From assembly GCF_030144855.1 (NCBI RefSeq), contig NC_082731.1, positions 20,460,001-20,524,000 of the forward strand: a DNA stretch of 64,000 nt. Reading direction: 5' to 3'. Shown piece by piece: positions 8,381 to 58,786 of the stretch; within the stretch, counting starts at the first letter, position 1; the number at the start of each line of letters is the position of its first letter. The stretch is from Hypanus sabinus (taxonomy: Eukaryota). Made by a program: the position numbers and the translations under genes. Under the pieces are notes generated by a model. It made no database searches. It had not been told where the DNA came from and saw nothing but the letters and a program-made list of their open reading frames with translations.

Positions 8381-8394
8381 TCGCTAGAGGGTGC
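8381..8394 (+). promoter_or_regulatory. CTCF-like motif 3' of RSS (TCGCTAGAGGGTGC)
   Basis: Close to CCASYAGRKGGCRS; 20 bp after the nonamer. Confidence 0.55.
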
Positions 8395-9570
8395 ACTTTA
8401 CTTGGCAAAGTGGCAGGAGCGCAAAAACAAATCCCCCACGGTCACGTGATCTAATTAAGAATGCGAACATTATTCGCAAACGGCATGCAGATTTGAGGAA
8501 CTCTCCGTCAATGGAATGTGTACCAATTTGTACAAATTAAGCGTTGTAAAGCATTTCCCAAACACACGCGATATGATGACAAAGGGGCAAATGTATCAAT
8601 AACTGATCTGCATTTGCCAACTGCCGGATTGCATATTAACAGGAAGTTTGTATTACGAGTGTAGGAAAAACAACGGTGAAAGGAATAAAAGCGAATTTCA
8701 GATACTCGAAATAGGCAAGGTGCCGCCTTCAGGGTATTTCTGGATCTGTCCAAATAATGACAGTACTATTCTCGGAATAGATCCTGAAAGGGCAGCAAGG
8801 GGCATTGTAGATCTAAGAAAGGGTTAAATAATATACACAAGTCAAAGGCAGCGCTCACGAAGAGCCAAATTCGTATATAACGTCACCAGCGTAATCGCAC
8901 TGACAGATGTTCACAAGTCAGGAACGGAAATTAGGGACACTGGAATTAATGCCGCGTGTACCCTCCTCAAAGAGAGGGAGGAACACGAATGTCAAATAGA
9001 AATAGAGCAGGAAAACGATATGGGTGCAAAGGAAATACCTCTGGACGGAAAGCAGGGAATACTTTGTGGATGGGTCTCGGAGGTACATAAACTAGAACAC
9101 ACGGTCTGGGTGCACTGTGGTGATGGACGCCGGTGAAGAGTGTAACTTCAACAGGACTACCAGCGGATTGCTAAGCTCAGGTTTCGAACCAGCTGGCCCT
9201 GACCGAAACAATGCGCCACAGTAAAGACAGACAAGAAGATATATATTCAGATAGCCCGTGTACCTTCCGGATGGTTATCAGCTGGCCTGCTGTTGATGAG
9301 GATTTGTGAGCATAACAGGTGCAGGTATACAGCACGGGCACCCAATACAACAACTACTCTGCACTCTCTGCCAGCTCAATTGACAGTAATTAAAGTGGAA
9401 TCTCAGCAGTAAGACAATATTAAGGAGCAGAAAGTAATAACAAGAAATTGCAAATATGCAGGAAGAAACGTCGGAAGCGATTTGAATAAAAACAGAGAGC
9501 TCTCAGTGGACCCTTGGATAACATTGAAGAAGCAGGGGAAAAACTTATGTCTGGTCATTATGAAGAAAAG

Positions 9571-9705
9571 AAAATCTGCGTATTTTGGAAATGCAAGAAA
9601 CACACACAAACCGCTGGTGGAATTCACGTGGCGAGGCAGCATCTTTGTAGTGATGAACTGTAATTAAGCTGCCTGGTCTGCTGCGTTCCTCCAGAATTTT
9701 GCATG
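9571..9705. repeat. Palindromic short element inserted just before the integrase core
   Basis: Arms cacacaaaatgctggaggaa..caggcagc / gctgcctg..ttcctccagcattttgtgtg (clearest at 21863-21997); also ~28636, 47451, 51920, 59931. Confidence 0.65.
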
Positions 9706-9934
9706 TATTGTCTTCTAATTATGGATCACTTCAGTCGGCGGGTAGAAGTTTTCCCAACCAGAGCAGCACTGCACGGTGTATTGTCAGTTAATCTTACCAA
9801 GGTGAAGAACTTTTCCAGACGGTGAAGGTGAAGAACTCTTCCAGACGGACGATGACCAGGAGCATATTTAACAGGGAATGTGATAAATGAAATTTGCCGA
9901 CTGCTAAGGATTCTACAACGTTTGCACAGACCCG

Positions 9935-10467
9935 ACCACCAAGGACGCGGCCTGGCAGATTAATGCGCCTTCAGGATTCAGGACCTGTTGCGTGGTTGAT
10001 TCGAGGCCGGTGCTGCCACCTGATGAGATGTGTGAGCCCACAGATGATCTGAAGCAGCAATTAGTGATGACCCGATTTTTTTGGCAAATAGCTCGGAAAA
10101 AGCGACGCCACAGACTTTAAGCGCCATAAATCAGAGAGTTGTTTGTTATGTCTCTCCCCTCGCTGTGAAATGGGACACCTCATTTGCCCTTATTCGGGAG
10201 AAACACAGACTGGTATATGTGGAATACTGGGTGAACGATTTGTCTTTGATGTACTGCATATATCTGTCTTTCTTAATGCTTTGGTGCAGGCTTGAGTGTT
10301 CTTACCGGGTGCCGATGCTTTTCACAGGAGGAGGAGGGAAGGGGATTCATTGTTTGGGGCACTCCTCTGTTTTTCTGGATGTTTTCGAAGAAATATTATT
10401 TCAGGATGTATATTGTATATATTTCTCCGACAATAAATGTGCCCGTTTAACCCATCGAAGCTATTGA
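9935..10467 (+). mobile_element. ~530-bp SINE-like insertion splitting the ERV integrase
   Basis: Lies between integrase HIPYH and PQSSG codons; ends in catttctctgacaataaatgtacctatt..(acctattgaac) tail; copies ~28982-29570, 47800-48362, 52265-52870. Confidence 0.6.
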
Positions 10468-14541: not shown

Positions 14542-14972
14542 ATGAATTTCCGGTGTTCTCTGCTGATTATATTGGCTCTGATGACCGGTTAGTCTTCGTG
14601 GTAACTGCCTGTCTCTGTTCCTTATTCCAGAGAAAGCTCGATCTGTTCATGCATTCTGTCATTTTCTTGCAGGAGCAATTGGGAAAGATTCAGTGACGCA
14701 GTGGCCGACTAAAATAACGATTGTGGAAGCACAAAAGGTATCACTGCACTGTAATTACACTGGCGATCCTCAAAATATTATTTGGTACGTTCAACGTCGA
14801 GCGGAATCTCCAAAATATGTGTTGACGTCATATAGCACTGGAATGATGGACCGGCATGCAGAATGTCCGGAGAGGTTAACCGGTGTTTGGCAGAGAGGCA
14901 GCAAGGCGGCACATTTGACGATCGCTGGTGCTTCTGTGTCGGACCCGCCGTGTATTTTTGTGCCATGAAGCC
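14542..14972 (+). pseudogene. TRAV: TCR V pseudogene V2 (leader 14542-14587, exon 14673-14972), FR3 frameshift
   Basis: 1-nt deletion (ggacccgcc vs ggactccgcc, ~14944) shifts out the second Cys and gives DPPCIFVP*. Confidence 0.92.
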
Positions 14973-15011
14973 CACAGTGTTGTGAGGTGATGAGAGCACC
15001 TGACAAAATCC
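14973..15011 (+). promoter_or_regulatory. RSS V2 (CACAGTG-23-ACAAAATCC)
   Basis: Intact heptamer, spacer and nonamer. Confidence 0.93.
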
Positions 15012-16068
15012 GAAGTCCGTGGCAGGAGCGCAGAAAATAAATCTATCCACGATCACGTGTTATATTTAAGTACGTGTAAATTATTCGCAAAAGATGTGTA
15101 GATTTGAGAAACTCTCCGTCGATGCAATGTGTACCAATTTGCACAATTTGAAACTTTATAAATCATTTCCCAAACAAATGCGATATGTCAGCTGACACAG
15201 TGGCAATATTATCGGTAACTAATCTGTATTTGCCGACAACCAACAGGATATTTATGTTACGGGTACAGGAGGAATATCGGTTATCTTCGAAAGTAGAGAT
15301 TTTAATATACTCCAAATAGGCGAGGCGCAACTTTCAATGTAATTCTAGATCTGTCCAAATAATGAGGGCACTATTCTCGGATAAGAAACTGAAATGGAAG
15401 TAAGTGGCATCGTAGATCCAGGAAAGGATAAAATGTTCCATGCCGAACGCTTACTCTCACCTAGTCCCACCTATCCGCACTCAGCCCATAACGCTCCATT
15501 CCTTTCCTGTCCACATACCTATCCATTTTGTTTAAAATGATAAAATCGAACCTGCCTCTGCCACATCTACTGGAAGCTCATTCCACGCAGATACCCCTCT
15601 ATGAGTAAAGAAGTTCCCCTCGTGTTACCCCTAAACTTTTGCATCTTAACTCTCAACTCATGTCCTCTTGTTTGAATCTCCCCTACTCTCAATGGAAAAC
15701 GCCTATCAATGAAAACTCTATCTATCCCCCTCATAATTTTAAATACCTCTATGAAGTCCACCCCTCAACCTTCTACACTCCAAAGAATAAAGACCTAACT
15801 TGTTCAACATTTCCCTGTAACCTAGGTGTTGAAACTCAGGTAACATTCTAGTAAATATCTGTACTCCCTCCATTTTATTGACATCTATCCGATAATTTGG
15901 TGACCAGAACTGAACATAATACTCCAAATTTGGCCTCACTAATGACTTGTACAATTTCAACATTACATCCCAACTCCTATACTCAATGCTTTGATTTATA
16001 AAGGCCAGCATACCAAAAGCTTTCTTCACCGCCTTACCCACATGAGATTCCACCTTCAGGGAACTATG

Positions 16069-18105
16069 TGTTACGCCCCTGAAAAACGGGGAGAAATAAT
16101 CACGTCAGCTATGTGAGGTGGTTGCCTTATTGAGAATTTACACAAGTGAAGAAAGTACCGCAATATCCCCTGGGTAAGACCTTCTGTGAGTTGGTACTCA
16201 AGGGTCAAGGGTCACAGTTCGATGAATGTCAACAGTCCATAATCACAGGACCCAGTCCATGTCTGGTGACGGGCCGCTGAGACGGTCTCTTCGCAGTCTT
16301 TCAACAGTCCATAGTCTCTCATGGCAATGTTCCGCATAAACAGTCTATGCATTGCCCATGACGTTAGTCAAATATCAGTTCTGTAGGCTCACACTGGCTG
16401 GCGTCCATACATGGTGGTGGGGGGGGGGGTATTGGAAGTAGTATGACTGTACAGGTGGTAGCCATTGGACCATTCCTGATGCATGGAAGAGAGGCAACAT
16501 CTGAGGTGCCGGCTAGACACTGTAGCAGGAAGGGATGCCAAGCTGATTGTAGATCATACGTCTCGGCGCGTGTCTCTGACTTTGTGGCAGCTGATAGGGC
16601 GGTTCCTCATGTTCAGTCGCAGCATTTGGTGAAGAAGAGGGGTGTGAGGAACGATCATCAGGCAGATTTCCAGCAGGGAAGTCTGTTTCCGCATCAGGCA
16701 GGTTTTCAGCAGGTGCATTAAACTCCTCCAGCCGATCTCCTTCAGGAGGCTACGCGGGTGATGCGACAGGAGCTTGCGTTTCAATTCTCCCTTCTGCTGG
16801 TGGGTGCCTGTTTTCAGGCTCCATCTCTGGTTCACCCAATGTCTCATTCCCTTCTGCTGGCATCCTGGGGGGCCGGAGCGGCTCATAATGAAGCTCAGAC
16901 TCATCCTCACTGTCCTCATCTGATTCCTGAGTTTGATGTGCAGGCTGGTGTCTCTTTTTCTGTCTCCTCTGGTCATTTGTAGCGATCTCTGGTTGTGTCT
17001 CAAAAGGTAAGTGATGACGGGGCATTAGCACGTTTCTGTATAGGACTCTGGAGTGTCCCTTACCCCTTTCTGGACTCAGTTCATAAATAGGCAGGCCTGA
17101 CCCCATTTGTCTCAATACTGTGTGGACTGTGTCCTCCCAATAGTTTCGGAGTTTACCTGGTCCCCCTCTGGGTGTCAAGTTTTTAATCAGGCCACGCTCA
17201 CCGGGTTGTAGAACTGAACTCCTTGCTTTTGTGTCATAGTACATTTTACTCCTTTCGGCAGCCCTTTGAGCATTTTGGTTTACAATGGCGTATGCTTCCT
17301 CCATACCTTGTTTCCATTTTTCCTCATAATTTCGCTGATCACTGGAACCTGGCTCTGTGTGCAGTCCAAAGAGCATACCAACTGGCAGCCTGGGTGATCT
17401 CCCGTACAGGAGGTAAAACGGTGAGTAGCCTGTCACTTCGCAGCGTGTGCACTTATAGGCATACACCAGTTTGTTCAGGGACTCATTCCAGTTTGATTTC
17501 TGTGTCTCCGTCAGTGTCCTTAGCATTTGCAACAATGTCCTATTCATGCGTTCCACTTGACCGTTCCCCATCGGGTGATAGGGCGTTGTTCTGGACCCAG
17601 CCACTCCGCTGAATTACTTTAACAGACTGAAGAACTGATTCTCGAACTCTCCTCATTGGTCGTGGTGGATGCGAGAGGGGAAGCCAAACTTCCGGGCGTA
17701 GTCAGTGAAGATGAGATTTGCAGTTTTTCCGGACTTTGATGTGGTTGCGTACGCCTGAACAAAACGTGTGCAGTGATCAACAACAACAAGGATGTACTCA
17801 TATCCACCTTTGCATCGGTCTAGATGGAGGAAGTCAAGACACACCAATTCAAATGGCTGTGTCGCCACAATATTTGTCAAGGGGGCTCTTGTATCGCAGC
17901 AGGGCTTTTTTGTTTTAGACAAGTGCAGGCTTTGGTCACATAGTGCTCTATTTCTGATTGCATTTATGGCCAGAAGAAGCGATAATACACTAAAGATACT
18001 GTGCAATCAGCGCCTTGGTGTCCTACATGATTGTGCAGTTCTTCCAACACCTTCCCTTTGTAGCTTTCTGGCAAGACTAATTGCTTGCGGGCAATTATAT
18101 ATGTA

Positions 18106-18166
<61 letters not shown>

Positions 18167-20140
18167 GTGTGTGTGGGTGCGTTTGGCTGGTTCGGTGTCT
18201 TTGAGCGAAATAGTCATATGCAAGTTTTCAATGCAGCCAAGATCCTTATCCGACCTTGAGAAGGAATGACACTCTTCTCTAAGCATCTGTTTCACTATTT
18301 GACTCCGCTTCTCACTGAGGTGGCTTATATCTACAGGTGGGTCCCACTGTTTACTGGCACTACCTGTGGGTTTCATGCTGGTGTGACTCATTGTGGCTGG
18401 TGTTGCAACTTTCTCAAAATCGGGGCGGGCAGTACCGTCATAATAGTATGTACTTTGACAATTAAAGTGCGCACTGGCAGAACAATGTCATGGCCAGTTG
18501 GATTAGACACATCAATTGTGATGACTGGCAGTACATGCTTCCTGACTCTGACTAGGGTGTCATAAAACTCAAGACCATCTGGGCACTGTGGGTTCAGGTC
18601 TGGCTGAAATAACACGGTCATGTCCTCTTTAAAAGGCTGTGCAGCTACACGTCAGTTAACTTGGATACTACTGTGTTTTCAAACTGCAAACTCCTGTTCC
18701 TTCATTTTCACCGCATACTCATCTTCTTGCTCTGCACTAAGAGCCTGGATGAAAGCTCTCACCCTTTTTTTCCTTTGAGTCCTGGGCAAGCTTTTCTCAC
18801 CGTGCTATATTGTTAAGTCTTTTTGGTTTTAGTCAGAATGTGCTTAATAACAGAAAAGCCAATGATGGGATGAGACAGGTGCCAGACTTTCATTACAAGC
18901 ACTGGAATGATCAGTGCTTCTGCTTGGTCAATTTTAGAGGCTAGCCGGAAAGTCGTTTCAGTCAACCCAAATAAGGCATTTCAGTTCCGTTTGCGGCAGT
19001 CAATGTCAAATCGTCATATGAGTCAAGGATCTCCGAGACATCTCTCAGCTTTGTGGTTGGCAAGTCTTCCTGTTTCCACCTTTCATCGATTATCGACACC
19101 TGACAGCCTGGGTCACATCAAGCTTGCAGTTAGTGGCCATCCAGGTAGCACTCGACAGTACACTGCCTACCAACTAGCTCGGTGACTTTGTGGGGGAGGC
19201 CAACCCGAGCTCAGGGGGGCGATGTGTTAACAGCTTTCTCTTCACAGGACGACCCTTGTTTCCGGTTGTCAGGTGAATCTATACGGCCACAATTTGCACG
19301 TTTCTGGGACTCTTTGCGAGTCACGGTTAACACCCGTCCCGTGGTGGTAACCATTTCCTGTTTCGACGGTCTGATTCCTCTAATTTTGCAGCCGGCTTGA
19401 AAATGTTCTCCACTTCCACATCGGTGGCAGTTTAGGCAGCGTCCATTTGTTCCTATCTGCTGGCAGACAAAATATTTCCGTGGAGCATGGACAGAGCGGT
19501 TAGTGTACTGATTAGGTCCATACTGAGGCTGCATTGGAGCAGGTGTTTGCGGCTGACTGTAGCTGTTGTAATACTGTTGCAGTAAAGCAGGTGACTGAGG
19601 GTCTCTATCTAGCCTGACTGCAGATGGGGCATAGGGCTGTTGATGAGACCTCATCTGTGTAGAGTCTCTTTAATCTGAGCTATCTCGGCACTGAGACCTT
19701 TTAAAGAAGCTACACCTGTCTTAAGCTCTTGTATCTCTGTTAACAGTTCAGGGGAAACCAGTGTCTTGTCTTCCTGCACCCGACACGTAGTAGATGCCCT
19801 ATCCTCTGACTGCACTACGCTTACATTTGTTGCTGAATGTGGGGTGTTAGACTTCTGTTTGTTTCTTCTTTCGGCCTCCTTAGCACAGGCGATGTTTAAT
19901 CTCTCTAACAAAAGTTCATTTGAGGTTTCAGTATCAAGGAGGAGAGGCTGCATGTCTATCCTGATACTGCCATTCTGGAGACCAGTACGTAATGTGTGTA
20001 AGCACATGCGCTGGACTAAAGCTGGATCATACCTAAGCCCTGATTCTGACTCTTGGGAAGCAAACAGTACTTTCTGCCTCACATCGAGAACCCGCATGAG
20101 AAAACTCTGAGGGGTTTCTTTGCTGTTCTGTACATCAGAA
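16069..20140 (-). mobile_element. Gypsy/Ty3 LTR retrotransposon, 5'-truncated, RT/RNase H mostly deleted
   Basis: gag-like 19651..20097; CHRCGSGEHFQAGC knuckle (19211..19654); RT start DLGCIENLHMTISL (18095..18391); integrase LDFLHLD..YILVVVDHCTRF, SRIHHDQ (17653..18006) and TTPYHPMGNGQVERMNRTL (16750..17604); minus-strand terminus ...ggggcgtaaCA at 16069. Confidence 0.88.
18103..18174. repeat. (TG)n/(CG)n microsatellite
   Basis: Direct reading. Confidence 0.95.
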
Positions 20141-21179
20141 GCTAGATGCTTGTAAAGCTCTCATTATCCATTACGCCACCTATCTCAGTATCATCTGCAT
20201 ACTTACTAATCCAATTTACCATTCCATCATCCAGACCATTAATGTGTATGACTAACAACATTGGACCCAGTACAGATCCCTGAGGCACAACACTAGTCAC
20301 TGGCCTGCAACTTGACAAACAGTTATCCACTACTACTCTCTGGCATCTCCCATCCAGCCACTGTTGAATCCATTGCACGACTGCAATATTAATACCTAAC
20401 GATTTAACCTTCCTAACTAACCCTCCGTGTGGAACCTTGTCAAAGGCCTTACTGAAATCCGTATAAATAAAATCCATTGCTTTACCCTCGTCAACTTTCC
20501 TAGTAACCGCTTCAAAAAATTCAATAAGTTATATCAAACATGACCTTCCACGCACAAATCCAAGTTGACTGCTCCGAATCAGACCCTGTCTATACAGATG
20601 ATCGTATATTTCATCTCTCAGAATACTTTCCATTAATTTACCCACCACTGACATCAAACTTATAGGCAAACAATGGAACCACATCGACAATACGCTAATC
20701 CTTCGGCACCATCCCCGTTTCGAATGAAATATTTCTGAGAGAGTCCCTGCTATTTCTACACTAAATTCCTTCAAGGTCCTAGTGAATATCCTGTCAGGAT
20801 CCGGAGATGTATCCACTTTTATATTCTTTAAAAGCTCTAGTACACCCTCTTCTTTAATCATTATAGTTTCCATAACTACCCAACTTGCTTCCATTAACTT
20901 ACAGAATTCAACAGAGTTCTCTTTAGTGAATTCCGAAGAAAAGAAATTGTTCAGAATCTCCCCGATCTCTTTTGGCTCCACACATAGCTGTCCACTCTGC
21001 TTCTCTAAGGGACCAATTTTATCCCTTACTATCCTTTTGCTATTAACATAACTGTAGAAACCCTTTGGATTTATTTTCACCTTCCCTGTCAAAGCAACCT
21101 CATATATTCATTTAGGTTTTTTAATTTTTTTTCTGAAGATGCTTTTTACATTCTTTACATTCCTCGGGCACCTCATTTA

Positions 21180-22760
21180 CAAAGTAGACAGCGTAATTGC
21201 ACTGACAGCTGTTCACAAGTCAGTAACGGCAGTTTGGGACAGTGGAATTAATCACGAGAGTACCCTCCTCACGGACTGGGAGGTACACGAATGTCAAATT
21301 GGATTAGAGCAGGAGAAAGATATGGGTGAAAAGGAAACTCCTCAGGATAGAAAACAGGGAATAGGTTTGCGGAGGACCTAAACTAGAACACACGGATTGG
21401 GTGCACCTTGATGAAGGACGCATGTGGATAATGAGCTTCAGCAGCACTGACAGATGATTTCTAAGCTCAGGTGGCGGAACTGTTGGTTCTGATAGAAACA
21501 ATGCGTTACAGTGAAGGCCAACAAGCAAATATGCATTCAGACAGCCCGTATACCTTAGGGACGGTTATTGGATGGCCTGCGGACGATGAGGGCTTGTATC
21601 CACAACAGGCGCAAGTATTCATCACGGGCACCCAGTACAGCAACTGCTGGAAGCACTGCCTGCCAGCTCAAGTGACAGTAATGAAAGCGGAATCTCAGCA
21701 GTAGGAGAAGAGTAAGGAGCAGAAAGTAATAATAAGAAATTGCTAATGTTCAGGAAGAAACGTCGGAGCCAGTTGATTAAAAACAGGCAGCTCCGAGGGG
21801 ACCCTTGGATAGCATTCAAAAAGCCGCTGGAAAAGCTTATGTCTCGTCATTAAGAGCAAAATAAAATCTGCAGATGCTGGAATTCCAAGAAATACACACA
21901 ACGTGCTGGAGGAATTCGCCTGGTCAGGCAGCATCTCCGTAGTGATGAACTGTAATTAAGCTGCCTGGTCACTTGTGTTCCTCCAGCATTTTGTGTGTAT
22001 TGCCTTGTAATTATTGATCTCTTGCGGCGGGTAGAAGCGTTGCATGGGAGTGTTGTGGGTGGGCGGCTTTCCGTTTCTAATATCTGTCATTCATTCTTTG
22101 GGGCACTGCTGTTTTTCTGGATGTTTCCGACGAATTATTATTTAATGATGTATATTCTATACATTTCTCTGACAATAAACGTACTTATTTAACCAATAGA
22201 ACCTATTGAACTCTCAGAGTTCAGGAACGGCAGAAAACATAAACTAAAGAAAGTCTTTGCCAAAACTACAGCTGATGGGGAACGACATGGGTTGATGTAT
22301 TACCATTCATACTGATGAGATTCCGAGCAACATAGTTGGTTTTCAGCCGCTATGAGCTGGTGATCTGGTGAAAAATCAAGTTTCCTAATGGGATAATTGC
22401 TGTTTGCGGTGAGACACGGGTGTACAAGGATAGACTAACACAGTACGTGAAAGACCTTTGTAGGCCACCTAAAGTATTGAAGATTCGAGGCAATCAACAG
22501 CAGCACATTGATGATCAGGATGATCCAGTGGGAAAGTAGGTAGTCCTCCCAAGTCCGAGTAACCAAGTCATGCTGACAGTGTTGCGTGAAAATGTATGCC
22601 ATCAGATGAATCGGAACACAGAAGGTACTTTCAGAAAGTGAGACGTGTTTGTGTGGAGTCTTCACGAGGCAGCCAGTGGATTCTGGTTATAATGTAAGGC
22701 TCACCTTCTTGTTGTCCCCACAGTCAAAGCGGGGGAAGGTGTGCAACTAGCAACCATGTA
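21180..22760 (+). mobile_element. ERV pol relic (unit V2, resumed after CR1/Gypsy; protease remnant at 15185-15435)
   Basis: ORF 21471..21704 AELLVLIETMRYSEGQQANMHSDSPYTLG..LPAQVTVMK is RNase H-like; YCLVIID at 21998. Confidence 0.8.
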
Positions 22761-22800: not shown

Positions 22801-23235
22801 CATGTTCTTCCTCATTATTCGTTCTTTCCGTTCCACAGAACATCTCTCTCTCTCACANNNNNNNNNNNNNNNNNNNNNNNNNNNNNNNNNNNNNNNNNNN
22901 NNNNNNNNNNNNNNNNNNNNNNNNNNNNNNNNNNNNNNNNNNNNNNNNNNNNNNNNNNNNNNNNNNNNNNNNNNNNNNNNNNNNNNNNNNNNNNNNNNNN
23001 NNNNNNNNNNNNNNNNNNNNNNNNNNNNNNNNNNNNNNNNNNNNNNNNNNNNNNNNNNNNNNNNNNNNNNNNNNNNNNNNNNNNNNNNNNNNNNNNNNTA
23101 TCCCTCGCTGATTCTCCAGCATTTATTCCCCTTATCTCTTCTCAATGCTTGGACTTTCTCCATATTCCACACTGCAGGCAGGCAAATTCAGTTGATGAAT
23201 TGGTGTGGTGAATATTCAGTCTTATTTATCTTCTT

Positions 23236-23271
<36 letters not shown>

Positions 23272-27128: not shown

Positions 27129-27561
27129 ATGAATTTCCTGTGTTCTGTGCTGATTATATTGGCTATGATGCCCGGTGAGTCTTCGCGGTAACGGTCTGTA
27201 TCTGTTCCTTATGTCCGTAGAAAGCTCGATCTGTTCATGTATTCTGTCACTTTATTCCAGGAGCAATTGGGAAAGATTCCATGACGCAGTGGCCGACTGA
27301 TATAACGATTGTGGAAGAACAAAATGTAACATTGAACTGTAATTACACTGGCGATGTTGACTTTATTTCTTGGTACGTTCAGCATCGAGTGGAACCTCCA
27401 AAATACTTGCTGCAGTTGTATAGGACCGGAAATATCTATCGACATGCAGAATGTCCAGAGAGGTTTACCGGTGGTTCGCAGAGTGGCAGCGAGGCGGCAC
27501 ATTTGGAGATCTCGGGTGCTTTCGTGTCGGACTCCGCCGTGTATCTTTGTGCCATAAGTCC
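27129..27561 (+). CDS. TRAV: TCR V segment V3 (leader 27129-27174, exon 27261-27561), apparently functional
   Basis: Open frame SMTQWP..LNC..WYVQH..YLCAISP; intact splice sites. Confidence 0.92.
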
Positions 27562-27600
27562 CACAGCGTTGTCAGGTGATGACAGCTCCGGACAAAATCC
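27562..27600 (+). promoter_or_regulatory. RSS V3 (CACAGCG-23-ACAAAATCC)
   Basis: One heptamer mismatch outside CAC. Confidence 0.92.
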
Positions 27601-27623
27601 AACGTCCGTGATGCAGTGAGCGC

Positions 27624-27637
27624 TCGCTAGAGGGCGC
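27624..27637 (+). promoter_or_regulatory. CTCF-like motif (TCGCTAGAGGGCGC)
   Basis: 23 bp after the nonamer; best match to consensus. Confidence 0.6.
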
Positions 27638-27814
27638 CCTTATGCCGGGAAAGTGGAAGGAGCGCAGATGCAAGTCCCCACTGTCACGTGATTGAGTTAA
27701 AATTGCGAAAACTATTCGCAAAAGGAAAGCAGATTTGAGGAAATCTCCGTCAATGGCTTGTGTACCATTTTGCACAAATTGAACCGTTACAAAACATTTC
27801 CCAAACACATGTGA

Positions 27815-33153: not shown

Positions 33154-33586
33154 ATGAATTTCCGGTGTTCTGTGCTGATTATATTGGCTATGATGCCCGG
33201 TGAGTCTTCGCGGTAATGTTCTGTATCTGTTCCTTATGTCCGGAGAAAGCTCGATCTGTTCATTTATTCTGTCATTTTATTGCAGGAGCAATTGGGAAAG
33301 ATTCCGTGACGCAGTGGCCGACTGATTTAACGATTGTGGAAGCACAAAATGTAACACTGAACTGTAATTACACTGGCGATGCTCAATATATTATTTGGTA
33401 CGTTCAGCATCGAATGGAATCTCCAAAATATTTGTTGACGGTGTATAGCACCGGAATGATGGACCGGCATGCAGAATGTCCGTCGAGGTTTACCAGTGGT
33501 TGGCAGAGAGGCAGAAAGGTGGCACATTTGAAGATATCTGGGGCTTTTGTGTCGGACTCCGCTGTGTATCTTTGTGCCATGAAGCC
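33154..33586 (+). CDS. TRAV: TCR V segment V4 (leader 33154-33199, exon 33286-33586); ORF intact, RSS degenerate
   Basis: ORF 33216..33635 contains a complete V domain ending YLCAMKP. Confidence 0.88.
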
Positions 33587-33624
33587 CACAATGTGTAAGT
33601 TTGTGAGAGCACCAGTCAAAATCC
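33587..33624 (+). promoter_or_regulatory. Degenerate RSS V4 (CACAATG-22-TCAAAATCC)
   Basis: Heptamer G5>A, 22-bp spacer, nonamer A1>T. Confidence 0.8.
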
Positions 33625-33647
33625 AACGTCCGTGATGCAGTGAGCGC

Positions 33648-33661
33648 TCACTAGAGGGGGC
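33648..33661 (+). promoter_or_regulatory. CTCF-like motif (TCACTAGAGGGGGC)
   Basis: 23 bp after the nonamer. Confidence 0.5.
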
Positions 33662-33842
33662 CCTTTGCCAGGGACAGTGGCAAGAACACAGAAAAAAAAT
33701 CTCCCCACTGTCACGTGATCGACTTAAGTATGCGTAAATTTTTCGCAAATGATATGTGGATCTGAGAAACTCTCCGTCGATCCAATGTTTACCAATTTGC
33801 ACAATTTGAAACTTTATAAATAATTTCCCAAACAAATGCGAT

Positions 33843-37631: not shown

Positions 37632-38064
37632 ATGAATTTCTTGAGTTCTCTGCTGATTCTATTGGCTATGATGCCCTGTGAGTCTTCACGGTAACAATCT
37701 GTATCTGTTCGTTACGTCTGGAGAAAGTTCGGTCTCTTCATGTATTCTATCATATTTTTGCAGGAGCAATTGGGAAAGATTTCGTGACGCAGTGGCCGAC
37801 TGATTTAACGATTGTGGAAGAACAAAATGTAACACTGAACTGTAATTACACTGGCGTACCTAACTATATTGCTTGGTACGTTCAGCATCGAGTGGAATCT
37901 CCAAAATACTTGCTGCAGTGGTATAGCACCAGAAAGATTTACCGGCATGCAGAATGTCCGGAGAATTTTGCCGGTGGTTTGCAGAGTGGCAGCAAGATGG
38001 CACATTGGAAGATATCTGGTGCTTTTCTGTCGAACTCCGTCGTGTATCTTTGTGCTGTGAGTCC
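37632..38064 (+). pseudogene. TRAV: TCR V pseudogene V5 (leader 37632-37677, exon 37764-38064); stop codon formed at the splice junction
   Basis: Leader ends in T (G in most paralogs) and exon 2 starts GA, giving TGA; FR3 also degenerate (HWKIS, SNSVVYLC). Confidence 0.82.
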
Positions 38065-38103
38065 CACAGTGCATCAAGGGGATGACAGCTCCGGACAAAA
38101 TCC
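38065..38103 (+). promoter_or_regulatory. RSS V5 (CACAGTG-23-ACAAAATCC)
   Basis: Intact. Confidence 0.93.
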
Positions 38104-39665
38104 GATGTCCGTGATGCAGTGAACGCTCTCTAGAGGGGGCCTTTTGCCGGGAAAGTGGCAGGAGTGCAGAAACAAATTCCCGTACGGTCACGCGATCGAC
38201 TTAAGAATGCGAAAATTATTCGCAAAATATATGCAGATTTGAGAAACTCTCTGTCGATGAAATGTGTGCCAAATTGCGCAAATTGAAACGTTTTAAAACA
38301 TTTCCCAAACACATGCGATATGCTTGTTCACCCAGGAGCAATGGTATCGATAACTCATCTGCATTTGTCAACGGCCGGAAGGATATTTATATTTCTGCTA
38401 CAAGAGAAATAACGGTGGAAGTAGAAATAATCGAATTGCACATACTCGAAAAGGCAGGCGCAACTTTCAGTGTATTTCTGGATCCATCAAAATAATGAGG
38501 GCACTATTCTCGGAAACTTAAAGGGAAGCAACGGCCACTGTAGATCCAGGAAAGGGTGAATTAATATGCAGAACTCGTGGACAACGAGCAGATGCAACCA
38601 AATTCGTACACAACTTAGACAACGAAAGCGCACTGACAGCTGTTCACAAGTCAGTACAGGCAGATAGGGACACTGGAATTGATCCCGCGGGTATCCTCCT
38701 CACAAAGAGGGAGTCACACGGATGTCAAATATGAAAAAGAGCAGAAAAAGGATATGGGTGCAAAGGAAACACCTCTGGACGGAAAGCAGGGTATAGCTTT
38801 GTGGATGGGTGTCGGAGGTACATAAACTAGAACACACGGTCTCGGTGCACTGTGGTGAAGGACCCAGGTGAAGAATGAGCTTCAGCCGCACTGATAGGGG
38901 ATGGCTAAACAAACGTGGCGGACCTGCTGGTCCTGACAGAAACAATGCGCTGTAGGAAAGGCAGGCAAGCAAATATATATTCAGACAGCCCGATTATATT
39001 CGGGACGTTTATCGGATGGCCTGGGGACGATGAGGATTTGTACCCACAACAGGTGCAGGTATTGAGCACGGGCACCAATATAACAACTGCTGGAAGCACT
39101 GTCGGGATTCGACAACGGTTCTACATCCCCTGCCCCCGAGTACGCAGCCTTAAAGAGCCCTGCGCCTTCAGTATCCGGGACCTGGAGGCGGGCTGATTCA
39201 TGGCCGGTGCTGCCGCCTGATGTTTTGTGCGAGTACACGGAATATCAAAAGATGCAATAACTGGGGACCCGAGTTCCCTGGGCACTGAGCTCGGATAAAG
39301 CGACGCTGCAGACTTTGAACACCATAAATCAGCGAGTTCTTTGTTCTGTCTCTTCTCTCGCTGTGAAACGGGAACACTTCTTTTTCCGCTATTCGGGAGA
39401 AAGAGAGCCAGTGATACGTCCAATAATGAGTGAACGATTTGTATTTGATGTACTGCATATGTCTGTCTTTCTTAATGCTTTGCTGCAGGCTTGAGTGCTG
39501 TTTCCGGTTGCCGATGGTTTTTCCTCGTGGGGGTTCGTTATTTGGCTGCTTCTTATGCGTGGCAGGGCGGAGCGGGAGAGTGCGGCTTTGCGTTCCTAAC
39601 ATCTGTCATTCATTCTTTCCTCTGGCTTCCAGGACGTTTTGGAAGAAACATTATCTCAGGATCTA

Positions 39666-44411: not shown

Positions 44412-44844
44412 ATGAATTTGCAGTGCACTCTGCTGATTATATTGGCTATGATGCCCGGTGAGTCTTCGCGGCAACGGTCTGTATCTGTTCCTATTGCCCG
44501 GTGAAAGATCGATCTTTTCATGCATTCTATTATTTTATTGCAGGAGCAATTGGGAAAGATTCCGTAACGCAGTAGCCGACTGATTTAACGATTGGTGAAC
44601 GACAAAATCTAACACTGACCTGCAATTACACTGGCGTTGCTCCCTCTATTTTTTGGAACGTTCAGCATCGAGTGCAATCTCCAAAATACATTCTAAAGTT
44701 ATATAGCAGCGGAAAGGTGGAGCGACATGCAGAATGTCCGGCGATGTTAACCGGTGATTTGGAGAGTGGCCGCAATACGGCACATTTGAAGATCTCTGGT
44801 GCTTTCGTGTCGGACTCCGCTGTGTATCTTTGTGCCATGAGTCC
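44412..44844 (+). pseudogene. TRAV: TCR V pseudogene V6 (leader 44412-44457, exon 44544-44844); FR1 nonsense codon
   Basis: TGG>TAG at 44573-44575; upstream region also carries deletions. Confidence 0.92.
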
Positions 44845-44883
44845 CACAGTGTTGCAAGGTGATGAGAGCTCCGGACAAAATCC
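44845..44883 (+). promoter_or_regulatory. RSS V6 (CACAGTG-23-ACAAAATCC)
   Basis: Intact. Confidence 0.93.
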
Positions 44884-45103
44884 GACGTCCATGATGCACT
44901 GAGCGCTGTCTAGAGGGAGCCCTTTGCCGGGAAACTGGCATGAGTGCAGGAAAAACTAAAACACCCAGGGTCACGGGATCGACTTAAGAACGCGAATATT
45001 ATTCGCAAAATATATGCAAATTTTAGGAAATCTCCGTCAATGAAATGTGTACCAATTTGCACAAATTGAAACGTTATAAAATATTTCCCAAGCACATGCA
45101 ATA

Positions 45104-48362: not shown

Positions 48363-48641
48363 NNNNNNNNNNNNNNNNNNNNNNNNNNNNNNNNNNNNNN
48401 NNNNNNNNNNNNNNNNNNNNNNNNNNNNNNNNNNNNNNNNNNNNNNNNNNNNNNNNNNNNNNNNNNNNNNNNNNNNNNNNNNNNNNNNNNNNNNNNNNNN
48501 NNNNNNNNNNNNNNNNNNNNNNNNNNNNNNNNNNNNNNNNNNNNNNNNNNNNNNNNNNNNNNNNNNNNNNNNNNNNNNNNNNNNNNNNNNNNNNNNNNNN
48601 NNNNNNNNNNNNNNNNNNNNNNNNNNNNNNNNNNNNNNNNN
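48363..48641. other. Assembly gap
   Basis: Run of N. Confidence 1.
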
Positions 48642-50495: not shown

Positions 50496-50928
50496 ATGAA
50501 TTTCCTGCGCTCTCTGCTGATTATATTGACTATGATGCCCAGTGAGTATTCGCGGTAACGGTCTGTATCTGTTCCTTATGTCCGGAGAAAGCACGATCTG
50601 TTCATGCATTTTGTCATTTTCCTGCAGGAGCATTTGGGAAAGATTCCGTGACGCAGTGGCCGACTGATATAACGATTGTGGAAGAACAAAATGTAACACT
50701 GAACTGTAATTATACTGGCTTTGCTAACTCTATTATATGGTACGTTCAGCATCGAGTGGAGTCTCCAAACTACTTGCTAAAGGTGTATAGCAGCGGAAAG
50801 ATGGAGAGGCATGCAGAATGTCCAGCGAGGTTTACCGGTGGTTTGGAGAGTGGCAGCAAGACGGCACATTTGAATATCTCTGGTGCTTTTGTTTCGGACT
50901 CCGCCGTGTATCTTTGTGCCTTGAGTCC
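50496..50928 (+). CDS. TRAV: TCR V segment V7 (leader 50496-50541, exon 50628-50928), apparently functional
   Basis: Open frame across the junction (A|GA = Arg); complete V domain ending YLCALSP. Confidence 0.92.
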
Positions 50929-50967
50929 CACAGTGTTGTAAGGTGATGAGAGCTCTGGACAAAATTC
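50929..50967 (+). promoter_or_regulatory. RSS V7 (CACAGTG-23-ACAAAATTC)
   Basis: Canonical heptamer, 23-bp spacer. Confidence 0.92.
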
Positions 50968-50990
50968 GACGTCTGTGATGCAGTGAGCGC

Positions 50991-51004
50991 TCGCTAGAGG
51001 GAGC
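50991..51004 (+). promoter_or_regulatory. CTCF-like motif (TCGCTAGAGGGAGC)
   Basis: 23 bp after the nonamer. Confidence 0.55.
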
Positions 51005-51129
51005 CCTATGCCGGAAATCTGGCAGTAGCACAGAAAAAATTCCTTACAGTCACGTGATCGACTAAGAAATGCGAAAAGTATTCTCATAAATAAACAGATT
51101 GGAGGAAGTCTCCGTCAACGGATCTTTTC

Positions 51130-53430: not shown

Positions 53431-54136
53431 TGTAATTATCGAGAATAGAAGAGATGGACACCAGCCAGCCACACCAGAACTGACCATAATAGATGGAAAC
53501 TGAACCACAGCAAAAGTAGTGGGCACCTAGAATGTGACAGAAACCCGTGAATAACATCCTAAAGAGTGACCATAAAAGTACTCTGTTCAGACAGCTGAAT
53601 ACTGAAGGTATATGAGTACTTGAATAGCAGAAAATTAAAAAAAAAACTTTTTGCAGAGAATGAATCGGCAGCAATTTAGTTTAAATCAGACATATCCATA
53701 ACTTCGAGCATGGTAGAACGAGGAAGATTACAGACGGAATCTGAATGCAGTGACGCTCAGTCTGAATGGGGAATAGAAGTGGGCTGGCCCCTTTCTGCAG
53801 TTGCGGCCAGCGATCGACTGTATAGTTCGGACAGGATCGCAACCAGGAAGAGGTCGTTGCAGTAATTGAAATGGAGAAAACCCCAATCCCTTATTGTACA
53901 TCGATGAGAGAGCCTGTGAGCCTGATGAATTTACTATTCTGCTGCCCCTGGAAAGAGAGAGTATTAGCTACCCGAGAATGGAGAGATGAAGACAGGGAAT
54001 TGACTAAGCTTCAGTCGGTCAGAAAAGAAAGCGCCAACAGGCATACGCATGAATCTGCATTTCGAAAGACTGTTGTTCACATTTCTGGACAAACTCTCTG
54101 TTTAGCATTTTGAAGGTAGCACTTAGGTATGATAAG

Positions 54137-56979: not shown

Positions 56980-57012
<33 letters not shown>

Positions 57013-58277
57013 AATGGTGATCGATACAGCAGTCAGTAGAGCGAGAGGCAGGGGAAGAGAGAGAAACTGGGAAGCGGAAGAATTAGTGGAAAAAGGATGT
57101 AAGAAGGCGATGTGGTTCAGCCGCAGTAGCTTAAAGTTTATAGCGAAGCTGTTTACAGTTCTGGGCTTTGGATGTACTGATAAGTATGCTAATGATTTAT
57201 TTTAATTTGAGCTGTGATTAGGTTAGGTTCTTAGATCTCTCGAGGTGAAGCTTGGTGCTAGATTGGAGTATTCCACTATCCACTGCTCAGTAAATAAAAA
57301 AAAACAAAAGTTGAAAATGTGGCACAAAGAAAGCATTGGAGAGAGAGGAAGACGGAGTGCGAGAGAAAGGGAAAGAAAAAACCGAGCAAGAGGGAAGGAT
57401 GGATACATCGTGGGGGGCGGGGCTTCATGAAGAAACAATTAAGACGGATGAAAATAAAGAGGGAAAGGCAAAATTTAAGGCAGGAACTAGATAGAGGAAA
57501 GCAACGCTCGCGAAACTGAAGGAGAGATCGATGTAGGGACACGACAGGGAATGAAAAATGGGTTGGAGATGAATAGGGTGTGAAGCGGTCAGAGAGAGAG
57601 AGAGAGAGAGAGAGGTGATAAATAAGACTCAATAATTACCACTCCAATTCATTAACTGAATTTACATGCAGTGTGCAATATGGAGAAAGTCCAAACATTG
57701 AGAAGAAATACGGGGAATAAATGCTGGAGAGCGATATTGAGAACACGCCAGAAAGAATGAGCGATATATAGATAGAGAGCGAGAGAGTGGGTGCGTGTGT
57801 GAGAGAGAGAGGTTCAATGGAACAGAAAGAATGAATGAGGGGGAAGCAAATCGTAAGGATATGGAGCTTCGAAAAATGGAGGGCTATCGATAAGCATAGG
57901 TAGTTATAAGGTAAGGAGATGTTCAGCATAGCTTTGTGGGCCGAAGGGACTGTATTATGCTGTCGGTTTTGTATGTTTCTATGTTCCTAGTGAATCAAAT
58001 TGCAAATAAGAGAAAGGAGGAGAAACCTTGCGATTTACTAATACGAGATAGAAAGAGGTACAAAGGCAAGCAAAATCAGCCAAAAGAACTGAAACAAAAT
58101 ATGATTGGTGTACGGACCGGGTTCATTTGGCGCTTACAGCCAATCAATGCAACGGCAGGACTGCACCCCCACATTTACGCAAGCTGAAATATGCCGCAGG
58201 TCTGATTTTACTTTTCATTATCGGTCAAGAATATTAAGTTATTCGACTACAAGTAAACTGTTTTAGATCAAGTGAGC

Positions 58278-58710
58278 ATGAATTTCCTGTGTTCTGTGCT
58301 GATTATATCGGCTGTGATGCCCGGTGAGTCTTCGCGGTAACGGTCTGTATCTGTTCCCTATGCCCGGAGAAATCTCGATCTGTTCATTCATTCTGTCATT
58401 TTATTGCAGGAGCAATTGGGAAAGATTCCGTGACGCAGTGGCCGACTGATTTAACGGCTGTAGAAGGACAAAATGTCACGCTGAACTGTAATTACACTGG
58501 CGATGCTCAATATATTATTTGGTACGTTCAGCATCGAGTGGAATCTCCAAAATACTTGCTAAAGGTGCATAGCACCAGAAAGATGGACCGACATGCAGAA
58601 TGTTCAGCGAGGTTTACCGGGGGTTTGGAAGGTGGCAGAAAGGAAGCAAATTTCAACATCTCTGGTGCTTTTGTGTCGGACTCCGCCGTGTATCTTTGTG
58701 CCATGATTCC
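58278..58710 (+). CDS. TRAV: TCR V segment V8 (leader 58278-58323, exon 58410-58710), apparently functional
   Basis: Complete V domain ending YLCAMIP; intact splice sites. Confidence 0.92.
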
Positions 58711-58749
58711 CACAGTGTTGCAAGGTGATGAGAGCTCAGCACAAAATCC
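58711..58749 (+). promoter_or_regulatory. RSS V8 (CACAGTG-23-ACAAAATCC)
   Basis: Intact. Confidence 0.95.
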
Positions 58750-58772
58750 GAGGTTCGTGATGTCGTGAGCGC

Positions 58773-58786
58773 TCGCTAGAGGGCGC
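58773..58786 (+). promoter_or_regulatory. CTCF-like motif (TCGCTAGAGGGCGC)
   Basis: 23 bp after the nonamer. Confidence 0.6.

What the first reader, a model, noticed from the sequence alone, without database searches (positions are those of the whole stretch)
8381..58786. CTCF-like element 20-23 bp 3' of the V RSSs: a VH-style RAG-scanning architecture in a fish TCR locus
Seen in sequence: TC(G/A)CTAGAGGG(C/T/A/G)GC follows the nonamer of V1 (8381), V3 (27624), V4 (33648), V7 (50991) and V8 (58773), always in forward orientation. The three pseudogenes have it deleted (V2), weakened (V5 TCTCTAGAGGGGGC, 38127) or mutated at the core C (V6 TGTCTAGAGGGAGC, 44907). Established knowledge: mouse D-proximal VH genes have CTCF elements ~20 bp 3' of the RSS that promote capture during loop-extrusion RAG scanning, whereas mouse Tcra V CTCF sites are mainly promoter-associated. 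Inference: an ancient or convergent RSS-adjacent CBE system in a chondrichthyan TCR alpha/delta locus. Caveats: the first position is T rather than the preferred C, and the copies are not independent because the flanks were co-duplicated.
Basis: partly seen in the sequence, partly recalled or inferred. Interest (0 to 1): 0.8.

Follow-up and report, generated by a model that had tools for sequence, protein, structure and literature searches.

The report
CTCF-like site beside skate TCR V signals
Eight tandem T-cell-receptor V gene segments of a skate-like fish carry a short CTCF-type DNA motif just after their recombination signal. The same motif sits in the same place and orientation in diverged V genes of the little skate, so a layout known from mouse antibody heavy-chain genes probably also exists in cartilaginous-fish TCR genes, though protein binding is untested.

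Summary
The window has eight tandem TCR V-alpha-like segments. Seven carry CTAGAGGGNGC 20-23 nt after the 23-RSS nonamer, on the V strand. V2 lost it in a 47-nt deletion.

V3 and V8 are the best two hits in the 64 kb. Pseudogenes V5 and V6 score 3.6 and -0.5.

Inside the window this is modest evidence. The 6-kb units were co-duplicated (77% non-coding identity), and 3-10% of non-coding windows are as conserved as the motif.

The stronger evidence is external:
- A little-skate contig has three V segments of two other families, each with a strong forward match (15.2-16.7 bits) 24-31 nt after the nonamer.
- An unidentified elasmobranch-like contig has one (16.9 bits) at 25 nt. Its core differences fall on PWM positions 6, 7, 8 and 12, three of which CTCF tolerates.
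- Sequence around these cores is near background similarity.

Frog, skink and whitefish TCR-alpha V clusters hold many forward CTCF motifs, none RSS-adjacent. One bamboo-shark V lacks the motif.

Verdict: a conserved RSS-adjacent CTCF-type element resembling mouse proximal VH CBEs. Binding, a scanning role and antiquity remain untested.

The parts
7890..8360 (+). V1: leader exon, intron, V exon (to 8321) and 23-RSS (8322-8360); open frame
   Evidence: Pfam V-set
8378..8396 (+). V1 CTCF-like element (14-mer at 8381-8394), 20 nt after the nonamer; PWM 9.9 bits; T at PWM position 15
14542..15011 (+). V2 pseudogene (frameshifted V exon) with 23-RSS 14973-15011
15012..15027 (+). V2 flank around the junction of a 47-nt deletion that removed the motif
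   Evidence: alignment A1
27129..27600 (+). V3: open frame; RSS 27562-27600 with heptamer CACAGCG
27621..27639 (+). V3 CTCF-like element (14-mer at 27624-27637), 23 nt after the nonamer; PWM 11.7 bits, joint best hit in the window
33154..33624 (+). V4: open frame; weak RSS (heptamer CACAATG, 22-nt spacer, nonamer TCAAAATCC)
33645..33663 (+). V4 CTCF-like element (14-mer at 33648-33661); PWM 8.2 bits; G at position 15
37632..38103 (+). V5: V exon open, but TGA at the leader/V-exon junction codon (predicted pseudogene); RSS 38065-38103
38124..38142 (+). V5 weakened element (14-mer at 38127-38140); forward PWM 3.6 bits
44412..44883 (+). V6 pseudogene (stop in the V exon); RSS 44845-44883
44904..44922 (+). 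V6 element with G in place of the near-invariant C at PWM position 5 (14-mer at 44907-44920); forward PWM -0.5 bits
50496..50967 (+). V7: open frame; RSS 50929-50967
50988..51006 (+). V7 CTCF-like element (14-mer at 50991-51004); PWM 8.9 bits; A at position 15
58278..58749 (+). V8: open frame; RSS 58711-58749
58770..58788 (+). V8 CTCF-like element (14-mer at 58773-58786); PWM 11.7 bits, joint best hit in the window

Best explanation
Each V unit carries, 20-23 nt beyond its 23-RSS nonamer, a CTCF-binding element written on the same strand as the V gene. Selection has kept this element in a lineage of skate-type TCR V-alpha/delta genes.

Proposed mechanism, by analogy with mouse D-proximal VH genes: CTCF bound here, with its cohesin-blocking N-terminal side facing downstream away from the V, pauses cohesin-driven loop extrusion coming from the J/C-side recombination centre. 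That would hold the adjacent V RSS next to RAG and raise use of that V.

Shown here:
- the motif, its position and its orientation;
- its grading with V integrity;
- its retention in diverged V families while the flanks decayed;
- its absence from this position in TCR-alpha clusters of bony vertebrates.

Inferred:
- that CTCF binds it;
- that the V genes point towards J/C;
- that binding affects scanning or V usage.

In this particular cluster the sites are weak versions (8-12 bits) of a stronger element (15-17 bits) seen in relatives.
For: - Position and orientation are constant in 7 of 8 units.
- PWM scores: V3 and V8 score 11.7 bits and are the two best hits in the 64 kb; V1, V7 and V4 score 9.9, 8.9 and 8.2. 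All are above the threshold of 8 that the little-skate genome paper used with matrix MA0139.1. The pseudogenes score 3.6 and -0.5, and V2 has the element deleted.
- Leucoraja erinacea contig L001: the only three PWM sites of at least 7.5 bits in 13.5 kb (16.7, 16.7 and 15.2 bits forward; two also read 11.4 bits on the reverse strand because the core is near-palindromic) lie 31, 31 and 24 nt after V nonamers, in V families only 48-60% identical in protein to V1.
- Contig L007: a forward 16.9-bit hit lies 25 nt after the nonamer, and a second of 13.8 bits lies 28 nt further on. Its core differs from the skate cores at PWM positions 6, 7, 8 and 12; at 7, 8 and 12 both bases score positively.
- Against shuffles the core aligns at z 4.2-6.5, while the spacer, the nonamer-to-core stretch and the next 60-120 nt mostly give z about 1-3. 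Against the closest relative (L001 V at 3446) similarity forms an island from about -17 to +31 nt around the core start and is at background on both sides.
- Within the window CTAGAGGG is the longest invariant run outside coding sequence. The motif ranks fifth among non-overlapping non-coding 14-mers, behind a splice donor, an intron block and two promoter-region blocks, one CCAAT-box-like.
- Skates have CTCF, cohesin and a CTCF orientation code at TAD borders. Elasmobranch CTCF is orthologous to that of bony vertebrates, with 11 zinc fingers, and its YDF cohesin-contact motif is absent from the CTCFL paralogues.
- Mouse precedent: CBEs lie within 68-100 bp of the RSS in proximal VH families, are absent from pseudogenes, and are needed for use of the V.
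Against: - The window copies are only moderate matches (p 1.2e-5 to 6.6e-5). About 9 hits of at least 8 bits are expected by chance in 64 kb, and 13 are seen.
- PWM position 4 is T (log-odds -2.6) in all window copies. Position 15, a strong C, is T, G, G, A or A in five of seven copies. Position 6 is rarely the preferred A.
- Column variability does not track PWM information content (Spearman -0.23, p 0.35).
- 7% of non-coding 14-column windows are at least as conserved among the seven copies.
- The link between pseudogenes and motif rests on 8 non-independent genes and a threshold chosen afterwards.
- A bamboo-shark V and the V on contig L008 have no such site.
- No binding, contact or usage data exist. 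J/C and any convergent partner sites are not in the window.
Confidence: 0.5

Rival explanations
1. It is a real CTCF site with a different job. It could mark a boundary between V transcription units, or be a contact point for enhancer/promoter hubs as with the promoter-side sites of mammalian Tcra. The V gene is only about 480 nt long, so a site just after the RSS is also within about 600 nt of the promoter.
For: - The motif and conservation evidence is the same as for the main explanation.
- In frog, skink and whitefish TCR-alpha V clusters, forward CTCF motifs are 5-20 times enriched. Where close to a V, they lie roughly 370-2,000 nt after one heptamer or 600-1,500 nt before the next; others lie further out. 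Exact placement therefore looks flexible.
- Inverting the mouse VH81X CBE only modestly reduced V usage.
- An E-box lies about 48 nt past the motif's 3' end in six units.
Against: - The tight, conserved spacing to the nonamer (20-31 nt) in three V families argues for a link to the RSS rather than to the promoter.
- No forward hit of at least 7.5 bits lies in the ~900 nt upstream of any V in the window.
Confidence: 0.2
2. It is a neutral passenger: a chance CTCF-like word in the flank of an ancestral V, copied along with every duplication and not yet decayed.
For: - The whole 6-kb unit is co-duplicated.
- 3-10% of non-coding windows are as conserved as the motif.
- The strongly preferred C at position 15 is free to vary, and the window as a whole is not enriched for CTCF-like hits.
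Against: - The core survives at 12-14 of 15 positions in V families whose RSS spacers and flanks are at or near background similarity.
- In L001 and L007 the scores are 15-17 bits, and these sites are the only hits on their contigs.
- In one family the distance to the nonamer changed (31 against 23 nt) while the core stayed.
- Of the changes seen in L007, three of four are exchanges that the CTCF matrix tolerates.
Confidence: 0.15
3. The conserved block is read by another factor (the CTCFL paralogue present in sharks, or another zinc-finger protein), or is part of a longer composite element. Its likeness to CTCF would then be partial.
For: - CTAGAG is invariant at positions where CTCF tolerates alternatives, whereas the CTCF-critical position 15 varies.
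- Against the nearest relative the conserved island extends 17 nt upstream and about 17 nt downstream of the core.
- Sharks have CTCFL.
Against: - L007 replaces CTAGAG by a different word that is still a strong CTCF match.
- An island of about 48 nt is close to the 27-32 nt that a cited paper gives for upstream motif, linker and 15-nt core bound by fingers 3-11.
- No other factor was identified.
Confidence: 0.1

Closest known systems
CTCF-binding elements directly downstream of the RSS of mouse D-proximal VH genes (families 7183, Q52, S107 and others; example VH81X)
   Same: - The site lies within tens of nt after a V 23-RSS (mouse: within 68-100 bp; here 20-31 nt from the nonamer).
- One site per V.
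- All sites share one orientation relative to the V.
- Neighbouring pseudogenes lack or have damaged sites.
   Different: - The locus type is TCR alpha/delta-like rather than Igh, and the animal is a cartilaginous fish.
- The window copies are weaker matches.
- Binding, looping and dependence of V usage on the site are shown in mouse and untested here.
- D/J-side partner sites are not in view.
CTCF sites of the mouse Tcra/Tcrd V region
   Same: The locus type is the same, and most sites point towards J-C (129 of 144 in mouse). Forward bias is also seen here in the frog, skink and whitefish clusters.
   Different: Mouse sites are mostly upstream of V promoters or intergenic. In the window there is no promoter-side hit, and the only V-associated hits are RSS-adjacent.
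Mouse Tcrb V-region CTCF sites
   Same: Two of 18 bound sites are reported near an RSS, so RSS-adjacent sites are not unique to Igh.
   Different: In Tcrb they are the exception. Here they are the rule for the V families seen.

Membership tests
V-RSS-adjacent CTCF-binding element (mouse proximal VH type) | The sequence matches the CTCF core motif above genome-scan thresholds | tested here: met
   V1, V3, V4, V7 and V8 score 8.2-11.7 bits (p 1.2e-5 to 6.6e-5). They pass p<1e-4 and the threshold of 8 used for skate. Relatives score 15.2-16.9 bits.
V-RSS-adjacent CTCF-binding element (mouse proximal VH type) | The site lies within about 100 bp downstream of the V RSS | tested here: met
   20-23 nt after the nonamer in the window, and 24, 25 and 31 nt in L001 and L007.
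V-RSS-adjacent CTCF-binding element (mouse proximal VH type) | Uniform orientation, convergent with sites at the D/J/C end | tested here: inconclusive
   All 11 sites are forward relative to their V. J/C and partner sites are not in the window, so convergence cannot be judged.
V-RSS-adjacent CTCF-binding element (mouse proximal VH type) | Functional Vs have it and neighbouring pseudogenes lack it | tested here: met
   5 of 5 open Vs score at least 8.2 bits, and 0 of 3 pseudogenes do. There are only 8 genes, they are not independent, and the cut-off was chosen afterwards.
V-RSS-adjacent CTCF-binding element (mouse proximal VH type) | Conserved beyond the neutral flank | tested here: met
   Across loci the core gives z 4.2-6.5 and its neighbours mostly about 1-3. 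Within the window the signal is modest: the motif falls in the top 3-10% of non-coding windows.
V-RSS-adjacent CTCF-binding element (mouse proximal VH type) | CTCF and cohesin occupancy in developing lymphocytes | not testable with these tools
V-RSS-adjacent CTCF-binding element (mouse proximal VH type) | V usage depends on the element | not testable with these tools
   No repertoire or perturbation data are available.
Promoter-side CTCF site of TCR alpha V genes (mammalian type) | A CTCF motif upstream of the V promoter | tested here: not met
   No forward hit of at least 7.5 bits lies in the ~900 nt upstream of any V. The only nearby hits are two reverse ones inside the leader exons of V6 and V7.
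Transposon-borne CTCF site (SINE-type spread) | The motif sits in a dispersed repeat found away from V flanks | tested here: not met
   The only other match to CTAGAGGGNGC at up to one mismatch is a single reverse-strand one at 44639-44649, inside the V6 exon; none lies in another repeat. Only 64 kb were searched. No Rfam or tRNA-like hit was found.

The most novel reading that the evidence does not exclude
An RSS-adjacent, J-ward-pointing CTCF element is an ancestral feature of elasmobranch (possibly early jawed-vertebrate) TCR alpha/delta V genes. Cohesin/CTCF-guided presentation of V segments to RAG would then date to the early history of V(D)J recombination. Bony vertebrates would have kept V-associated forward CTCF sites in this locus but moved them to the promoter side, and mouse Igh would keep or have re-invented the RSS-adjacent form.
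Probability: 0.3. Interest if true: 0.8.

Novelty: new variant of a known kind. Interest (0 to 1): 0.6.

Why it matters
RSS-adjacent CTCF elements are the best-understood example of how loop extrusion selects V segments, but they are described for mouse Igh. In the mouse data read here, TCR alpha/delta sites sit mostly upstream of V promoters.

A conserved RSS-adjacent site in skate TCR V genes would show that this layout is not an Igh or mammalian peculiarity. It would give a datable comparative handle on when CTCF/cohesin became coupled to RAG targeting. It would also offer a natural allelic series: sites of 17 to 8 bits, damaged sites and a deletion, all within one gene family. That series could be read against V usage.

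No paper in the searched library links CTCF to antigen-receptor loci of cartilaginous fish.

Tried and rejected
Searches that gave nothing:
- The protein word-index search with V1 found nothing.
- P0020 and P0064 are not on record.
- The Mustelus asterias and Heterodontus francisci contigs were located but no DNA was served, so sharks other than one bamboo-shark contig could not be examined.
- Searching papers for the run accession of L007 gave nothing, so its species is unknown. Its V is closest to bamboo-shark and L008 Vs at 50-52%.
- Rfam, tRNA and tandem-repeat scans found nothing bearing on the motif.
- No long terminal repeats were found around the 5.75-kb insertion.

Ideas tested and set aside:
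- A link between column variability and PWM information content is not significant.
- CpG observed/expected in the flank is not distinctive; the 60 nt after the nonamer are GC-rich at 58% against 44% for the window.
- CTCF upstream motif: the flank has TGCAGT starting 12 nt before the core. It matches only the first part of the published CTGCAGTTCC-like upstream motif, with a 2-3 nt linker at the short end of the published 2-7 nt range. This was left as an observation.
- A heptamer-like word near the E-box is not conserved among units, so a cryptic RSS was rejected.
- The palindrome CCCTCTAGAGGG is not conserved among copies, so a palindrome-reading factor was rejected.

The CTCF count matrix used was typed from my memory of JASPAR MA0139.1. 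Neither is viral or toxin sequence.

Indirect checks of the matrix: the column sums are coherent at 908-913, and it detects a 5-20-fold, orientation-biased enrichment in three independent TCR-alpha clusters. All PWM numbers should be recomputed with the curated file.
Full report
**1. What is in the window**

The window holds eight V gene segments in tandem on the + strand. Each has a 46-nt leader exon, an 85-86-nt intron, a 301-nt V exon and a 23-RSS. V4 has a 22-nt spacer.

The V exons are Pfam V-set domains (E about 1e-12). Their best matches among solved structures are TCR alpha V domains.

The closest proteins found anywhere are:
- a Leucoraja erinacea (little skate) gene model, 54% identical over all matched stretches by phmmer and 61% in the best BLASTP local alignment;
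- an unnamed rearranged V-J sequence (P0020, 50-53% identical) that has the V domain followed by a J-like tail.

The locus is therefore a TCR alpha/delta-type V cluster of a skate-like cartilaginous fish. The species itself was not determined.

V1, V3, V4, V7 and V8 have open frames. V2 is frameshifted. V6 has a stop in the V exon. V5 has TGA at the codon that spans the leader/V-exon junction. V3 (heptamer CACAGCG) and V4 (CACAATG, 22-nt spacer, nonamer starting with T) have weakened RSSs.

The whole unit of about 6 kb is repeated at 74-84% identity, so the flanks were duplicated together with the genes.

**2. The gaps**

This was tested first, as asked, using unit homology.

- Gap 22858-23098. 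The unit stops 56 nt to the left of the gap. The first 1.14 kb to the right (23099-24237) is unit sequence in inverted orientation. The direct unit then resumes almost exactly where it stopped. The two sides are therefore not continuous in register. The junction at about 24240 lies in read sequence, so at least part of this rearrangement is real.
- Gap 48363-48641. Order and strand are kept, but about 2.2 kb of unit is missing against 279 N.
- Gap 7307-7438. This gap lies outside the finding's range. It is collinear and corresponds to about 60 nt of unit.

None of the gaps interrupts a V exon, an RSS or a motif. Nothing was filled in. The count of eight Vs is a lower bound.

**3. The observation**

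The 11-mer core is also present at V5 and V6. V2 has lost 47 nt including the motif. The 14-mer starts 20 nt (V1) or 23 nt (the others) after the nonamer.

**4. How CTCF-like is it?**

I scored the window with a CTCF count matrix typed from my memory of JASPAR MA0139.1. This is a declared slip, and the numbers need recomputing with the curated file.

| Site | Forward score (bits) | p |
|---|---|---|
| V3, V8 | 11.7 | 1.2e-5 |
| V1 | 9.9 | 2.9e-5 |
| V7 | 8.9 | 4.9e-5 |
| V4 | 8.2 | 6.6e-5 |
| V5 | 3.6 | 4.4e-4 |
| V6 | -0.5 | 1.8e-3 |

V3 and V8 are the two best hits in the 64 kb. The five sites of open Vs pass p<1e-4 and the score of 8 that the little-skate genome paper used with this matrix.

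They are nevertheless moderate sites:
- Position 4 is T in every window copy.
- Position 6 is rarely the preferred A.
- Position 15, where the matrix strongly prefers C, reads T, C, G, G, A, A, C across V1 and V3-V8.

A validated human insulator core quoted in a paper also has A at that position. The window as a whole is not enriched: 13 hits of at least 8 bits against about 9 expected. It contains no hit of 12 bits or more.

**5. Conservation inside the window**

I aligned the seven motif-bearing units from -880 to +900 around the heptamer.

| Class | Invariant columns | Mean pairwise identity |
|---|---|---|
| Non-coding | 42% | 0.768 |
| Coding | 64% | 0.864 |
| 14-mer motif | 79% | 0.871 |

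CTAGAGGG is the longest invariant run outside coding sequence. No other non-coding 11-column window has 10 invariant columns.

By pairwise identity, however, 54 of 733 non-coding 14-column windows and 22 of 748 11-column windows do as well as the motif.

Ranked without overlap, the motif block is fifth. Ahead of it are the splice donor, an intron block and two promoter-region blocks, one of which is CCAAT-box-like. It therefore sits among blocks that include recognisable functional elements.

**6. Evidence from other loci**

A search of protein representatives found V-domain gene models, and the DNA around several of them was fetched.

*L001* is a 13.5-kb piece of a Leucoraja erinacea contig with three V segments.
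- Two belong to a family whose RSS spacer and flank do not align with the window. They carry a forward site of 16.7 bits, with C at position 4, starting 31 nt after the nonamer.
- The third is about 69% identical in DNA to the window Vs. It has a forward 15.2-bit site 24 nt after the nonamer.
- These are the only three sites of at least 7.5 bits on the contig. Two of them also read 11.4 bits on the reverse strand because the core is near-palindromic.

*L007* is a 952-nt contig assembled from a public sequencing run of unknown species. Its V is closest to bamboo-shark and L008 Vs.
- It has a forward 16.9-bit site 25 nt after the nonamer, and a second forward site (13.8 bits) 28 nt further on.
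- Its core uses a different word from the skate copies. The differences fall on PWM positions 6, 7, 8 and 12. At positions 7, 8 and 12 both alternatives score positively in the matrix.
- The 17 nt before its core are 53-65% identical to the window copies, against about 20-35% after the core.

Against shuffled controls the core aligns at z 4.2-6.5. The spacer, the nonamer-to-core segment and the following 60-120 nt mostly give z about 1-3.

Against the closest relative, similarity forms an island from about -17 to +31 nt around the core start and is at background on both sides. A cited paper gives 27-32 nt for the upstream motif, linker and core together.

**7. Controls**

| Locus | Hits of at least 12 bits | Expected | Forward relative to the Vs |
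|---|---|---|---|
| Frog (L002) | 15 | 2.5 | 10 |
| Skink (L003) | 14 | 0.7 | 10 |
| Whitefish (L004) | 12 | 0.9 | 8 |

This also shows that the recalled matrix detects a real signal. Where these hits are close to a V, they lie roughly 600-1,500 nt before the next V heptamer or 370-2,000 nt after the previous one; others lie further out. None is forward and within 100 nt of an RSS. The whitefish has two reverse hits, 72 and 96 nt after heptamers.

The single V-alpha-like segment on a bamboo-shark contig, and the V on metagenome contig L008, have no site. The RSS-adjacent layout is therefore documented for the window, the little skate and one further sample. It is not documented for cartilaginous fish in general.

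**8. Most likely mechanism**

The best reading is a CTCF-binding element kept next to the V RSS. In skates, CTCF motifs at TAD borders show the orientation code expected from loop extrusion, and the ctcf and cohesin genes are present. Elasmobranch CTCF is orthologous to that of bony vertebrates, and its cohesin-contacting YDF motif is absent from the CTCFL paralogues.

In mouse Igh, CBEs directly after the RSS of D-proximal VH genes promote use of that VH during RAG scanning. Pseudogenes lack them.

By analogy, a site written on the V strand would stall extrusion arriving from the J/C side and hold the RSS at the recombination centre. This orientation rule comes from established knowledge of CTCF, whose N-terminal side lies at the 3' end of the motif as written.

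The following are inference: that CTCF binds, that the V genes face J/C, and that binding changes V usage. The G at position 6 in V1, V3, V7 and V8 creates a CpG at a core position where, from my own knowledge of CTCF structural work, methylation lowers binding. If that holds, these sites could be methylation-sensitive. This was not tested.

**9. Rivals**

- *CTCF site with another role.* It could act as a unit boundary or an enhancer-hub contact. The V gene is only about 480 nt long, so an RSS-side site and a promoter-side site are close together, and placement varies among vertebrates. The constant spacing to the nonamer argues for a tie to the RSS.
- *Neutral passenger.* This is favoured by the co-duplication, the variable position 15 and the modest within-window statistics. 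It is disfavoured by the cross-family retention.
- *Another factor.* This is favoured by the invariance of CTAGAG and by the wider conserved island. It is disfavoured by L007, which changes that word yet remains a strong CTCF match.

**10. Comparison and novelty**

The element works like, and meets the testable sequence criteria of, the RSS-adjacent CBEs of mouse proximal VH families. The defining functional criteria (occupancy, and dependence of V usage on the site) cannot be tested here.

It does not fit the promoter-side type of mammalian Tcra. I found no paper in the searchable library that links CTCF with antigen-receptor loci of cartilaginous fish. That library lacks most subscription journals.

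I rate it a new variant of a known kind: the same device in a different locus class and a distant lineage.

**11. Limits**

- There are only three external V families and one unidentified sample.
- Shark contigs that were located could not be read.
- There are no functional data.

They were only scanned as separate ORFs.

Noticed in passing
window 8443, 15054, 27685, 33712, 51051, 58835 (CACGTG); altered at the matching places after V5 (about 38187) and V6 (about 44969): An E-box CACGTG inside a conserved GTCACGTGAT block lies about 48 nt past the 3' end of the CTCF-like motif, 121-125 nt from the heptamer (81 nt in V2, because of its deletion). It is intact in V1-V4, V7 and V8. It reads CACGCG in V5 and CACGGG in V6, both pseudogenes. 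It is not present in the L001 or L007 flanks.
   Followed up: partly
window 58102-58146 (V8) and the matching places in the other units: Among the most conserved non-coding blocks of the unit are a CCAAT-box-like word (CAGCCAATCA) and an inverted one (ATTGG), about 130-175 nt upstream of the leader ATG. These are likely V promoter elements.
   Followed up: no
window 8368-8373, 27609-27614 and matching places; L001 about 3494-3499: TGCAGT starts 12 nt before the core in most copies and in the closest little-skate relative. It resembles the start of the published CTCF upstream motif (CTGCAGTTCC-like). Only about 7 of 10 positions match, and the linker of 2-3 nt is at the short end of the published range.
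   Followed up: partly
L007:747-765: A second forward CTCF match (13.8 bits) lies 28 nt after the first, making a tandem pair just after one V RSS.
   Followed up: no
window 1-64000: No CTCF match of 12 bits or more occurs anywhere in the window (about 1.3 expected). TCR-alpha V clusters of frog, skink and whitefish have about 1-4 such matches per 10 kb, mostly forward.
   Followed up: partly
L004:36076-36094 and L004:19992-20010: In the whitefish cluster two reverse-oriented CTCF matches (15.7 and 12.6 bits) lie 72 and 96 nt after V heptamers. They have the opposite orientation to the skate sites.
   Followed up: no
window 23099-24237: A 1.14-kb block of unit sequence lies in inverted orientation immediately right of the gap 22858-23098. 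The direct unit resumes after it in register. This is either a real inverted duplication or partly an assembly problem. An inverted V could be hidden in the gap.
   Followed up: partly
window 48363-48641: The gap replaces about 2.2 kb of unit sequence as judged from the neighbouring unit, so its stated length of 279 is probably too short, or this unit carries a deletion.
   Followed up: partly
window 1431-3572 (+): A fragment of a non-LTR (LINE-type) retrotransposon. Endonuclease and reverse-transcriptase Pfam matches are spread over several separate short ORFs, so the coding region is interrupted several times. It was not analysed further.
   Followed up: partly
window 15435-21185: A 5.75-kb insertion relative to the other units explains the long V2-V3 spacing. 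It gives only a weak integrase-core match, below the Pfam cut-off. Its ORFs are short and fragmentary. No terminal direct or inverted repeats were found. It contains a (TG)39 microsatellite at 18102-18179.
   Followed up: partly
window 51117-51122: Homology between V7 and every other unit breaks here. The other units carry about 190-235 extra nt at this point, roughly 190 nt after the RSS, so V7 has a deletion or the others share an insertion.
   Followed up: no
window 44421-44439 and 50505-50523 (-): Reverse-strand CTCF-like matches (10.5 and 9.8 bits) lie inside the leader exons of V6 and V7. They fall in coding sequence and are below threshold in the other units, so they are probably coincidental.
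   Followed up: no
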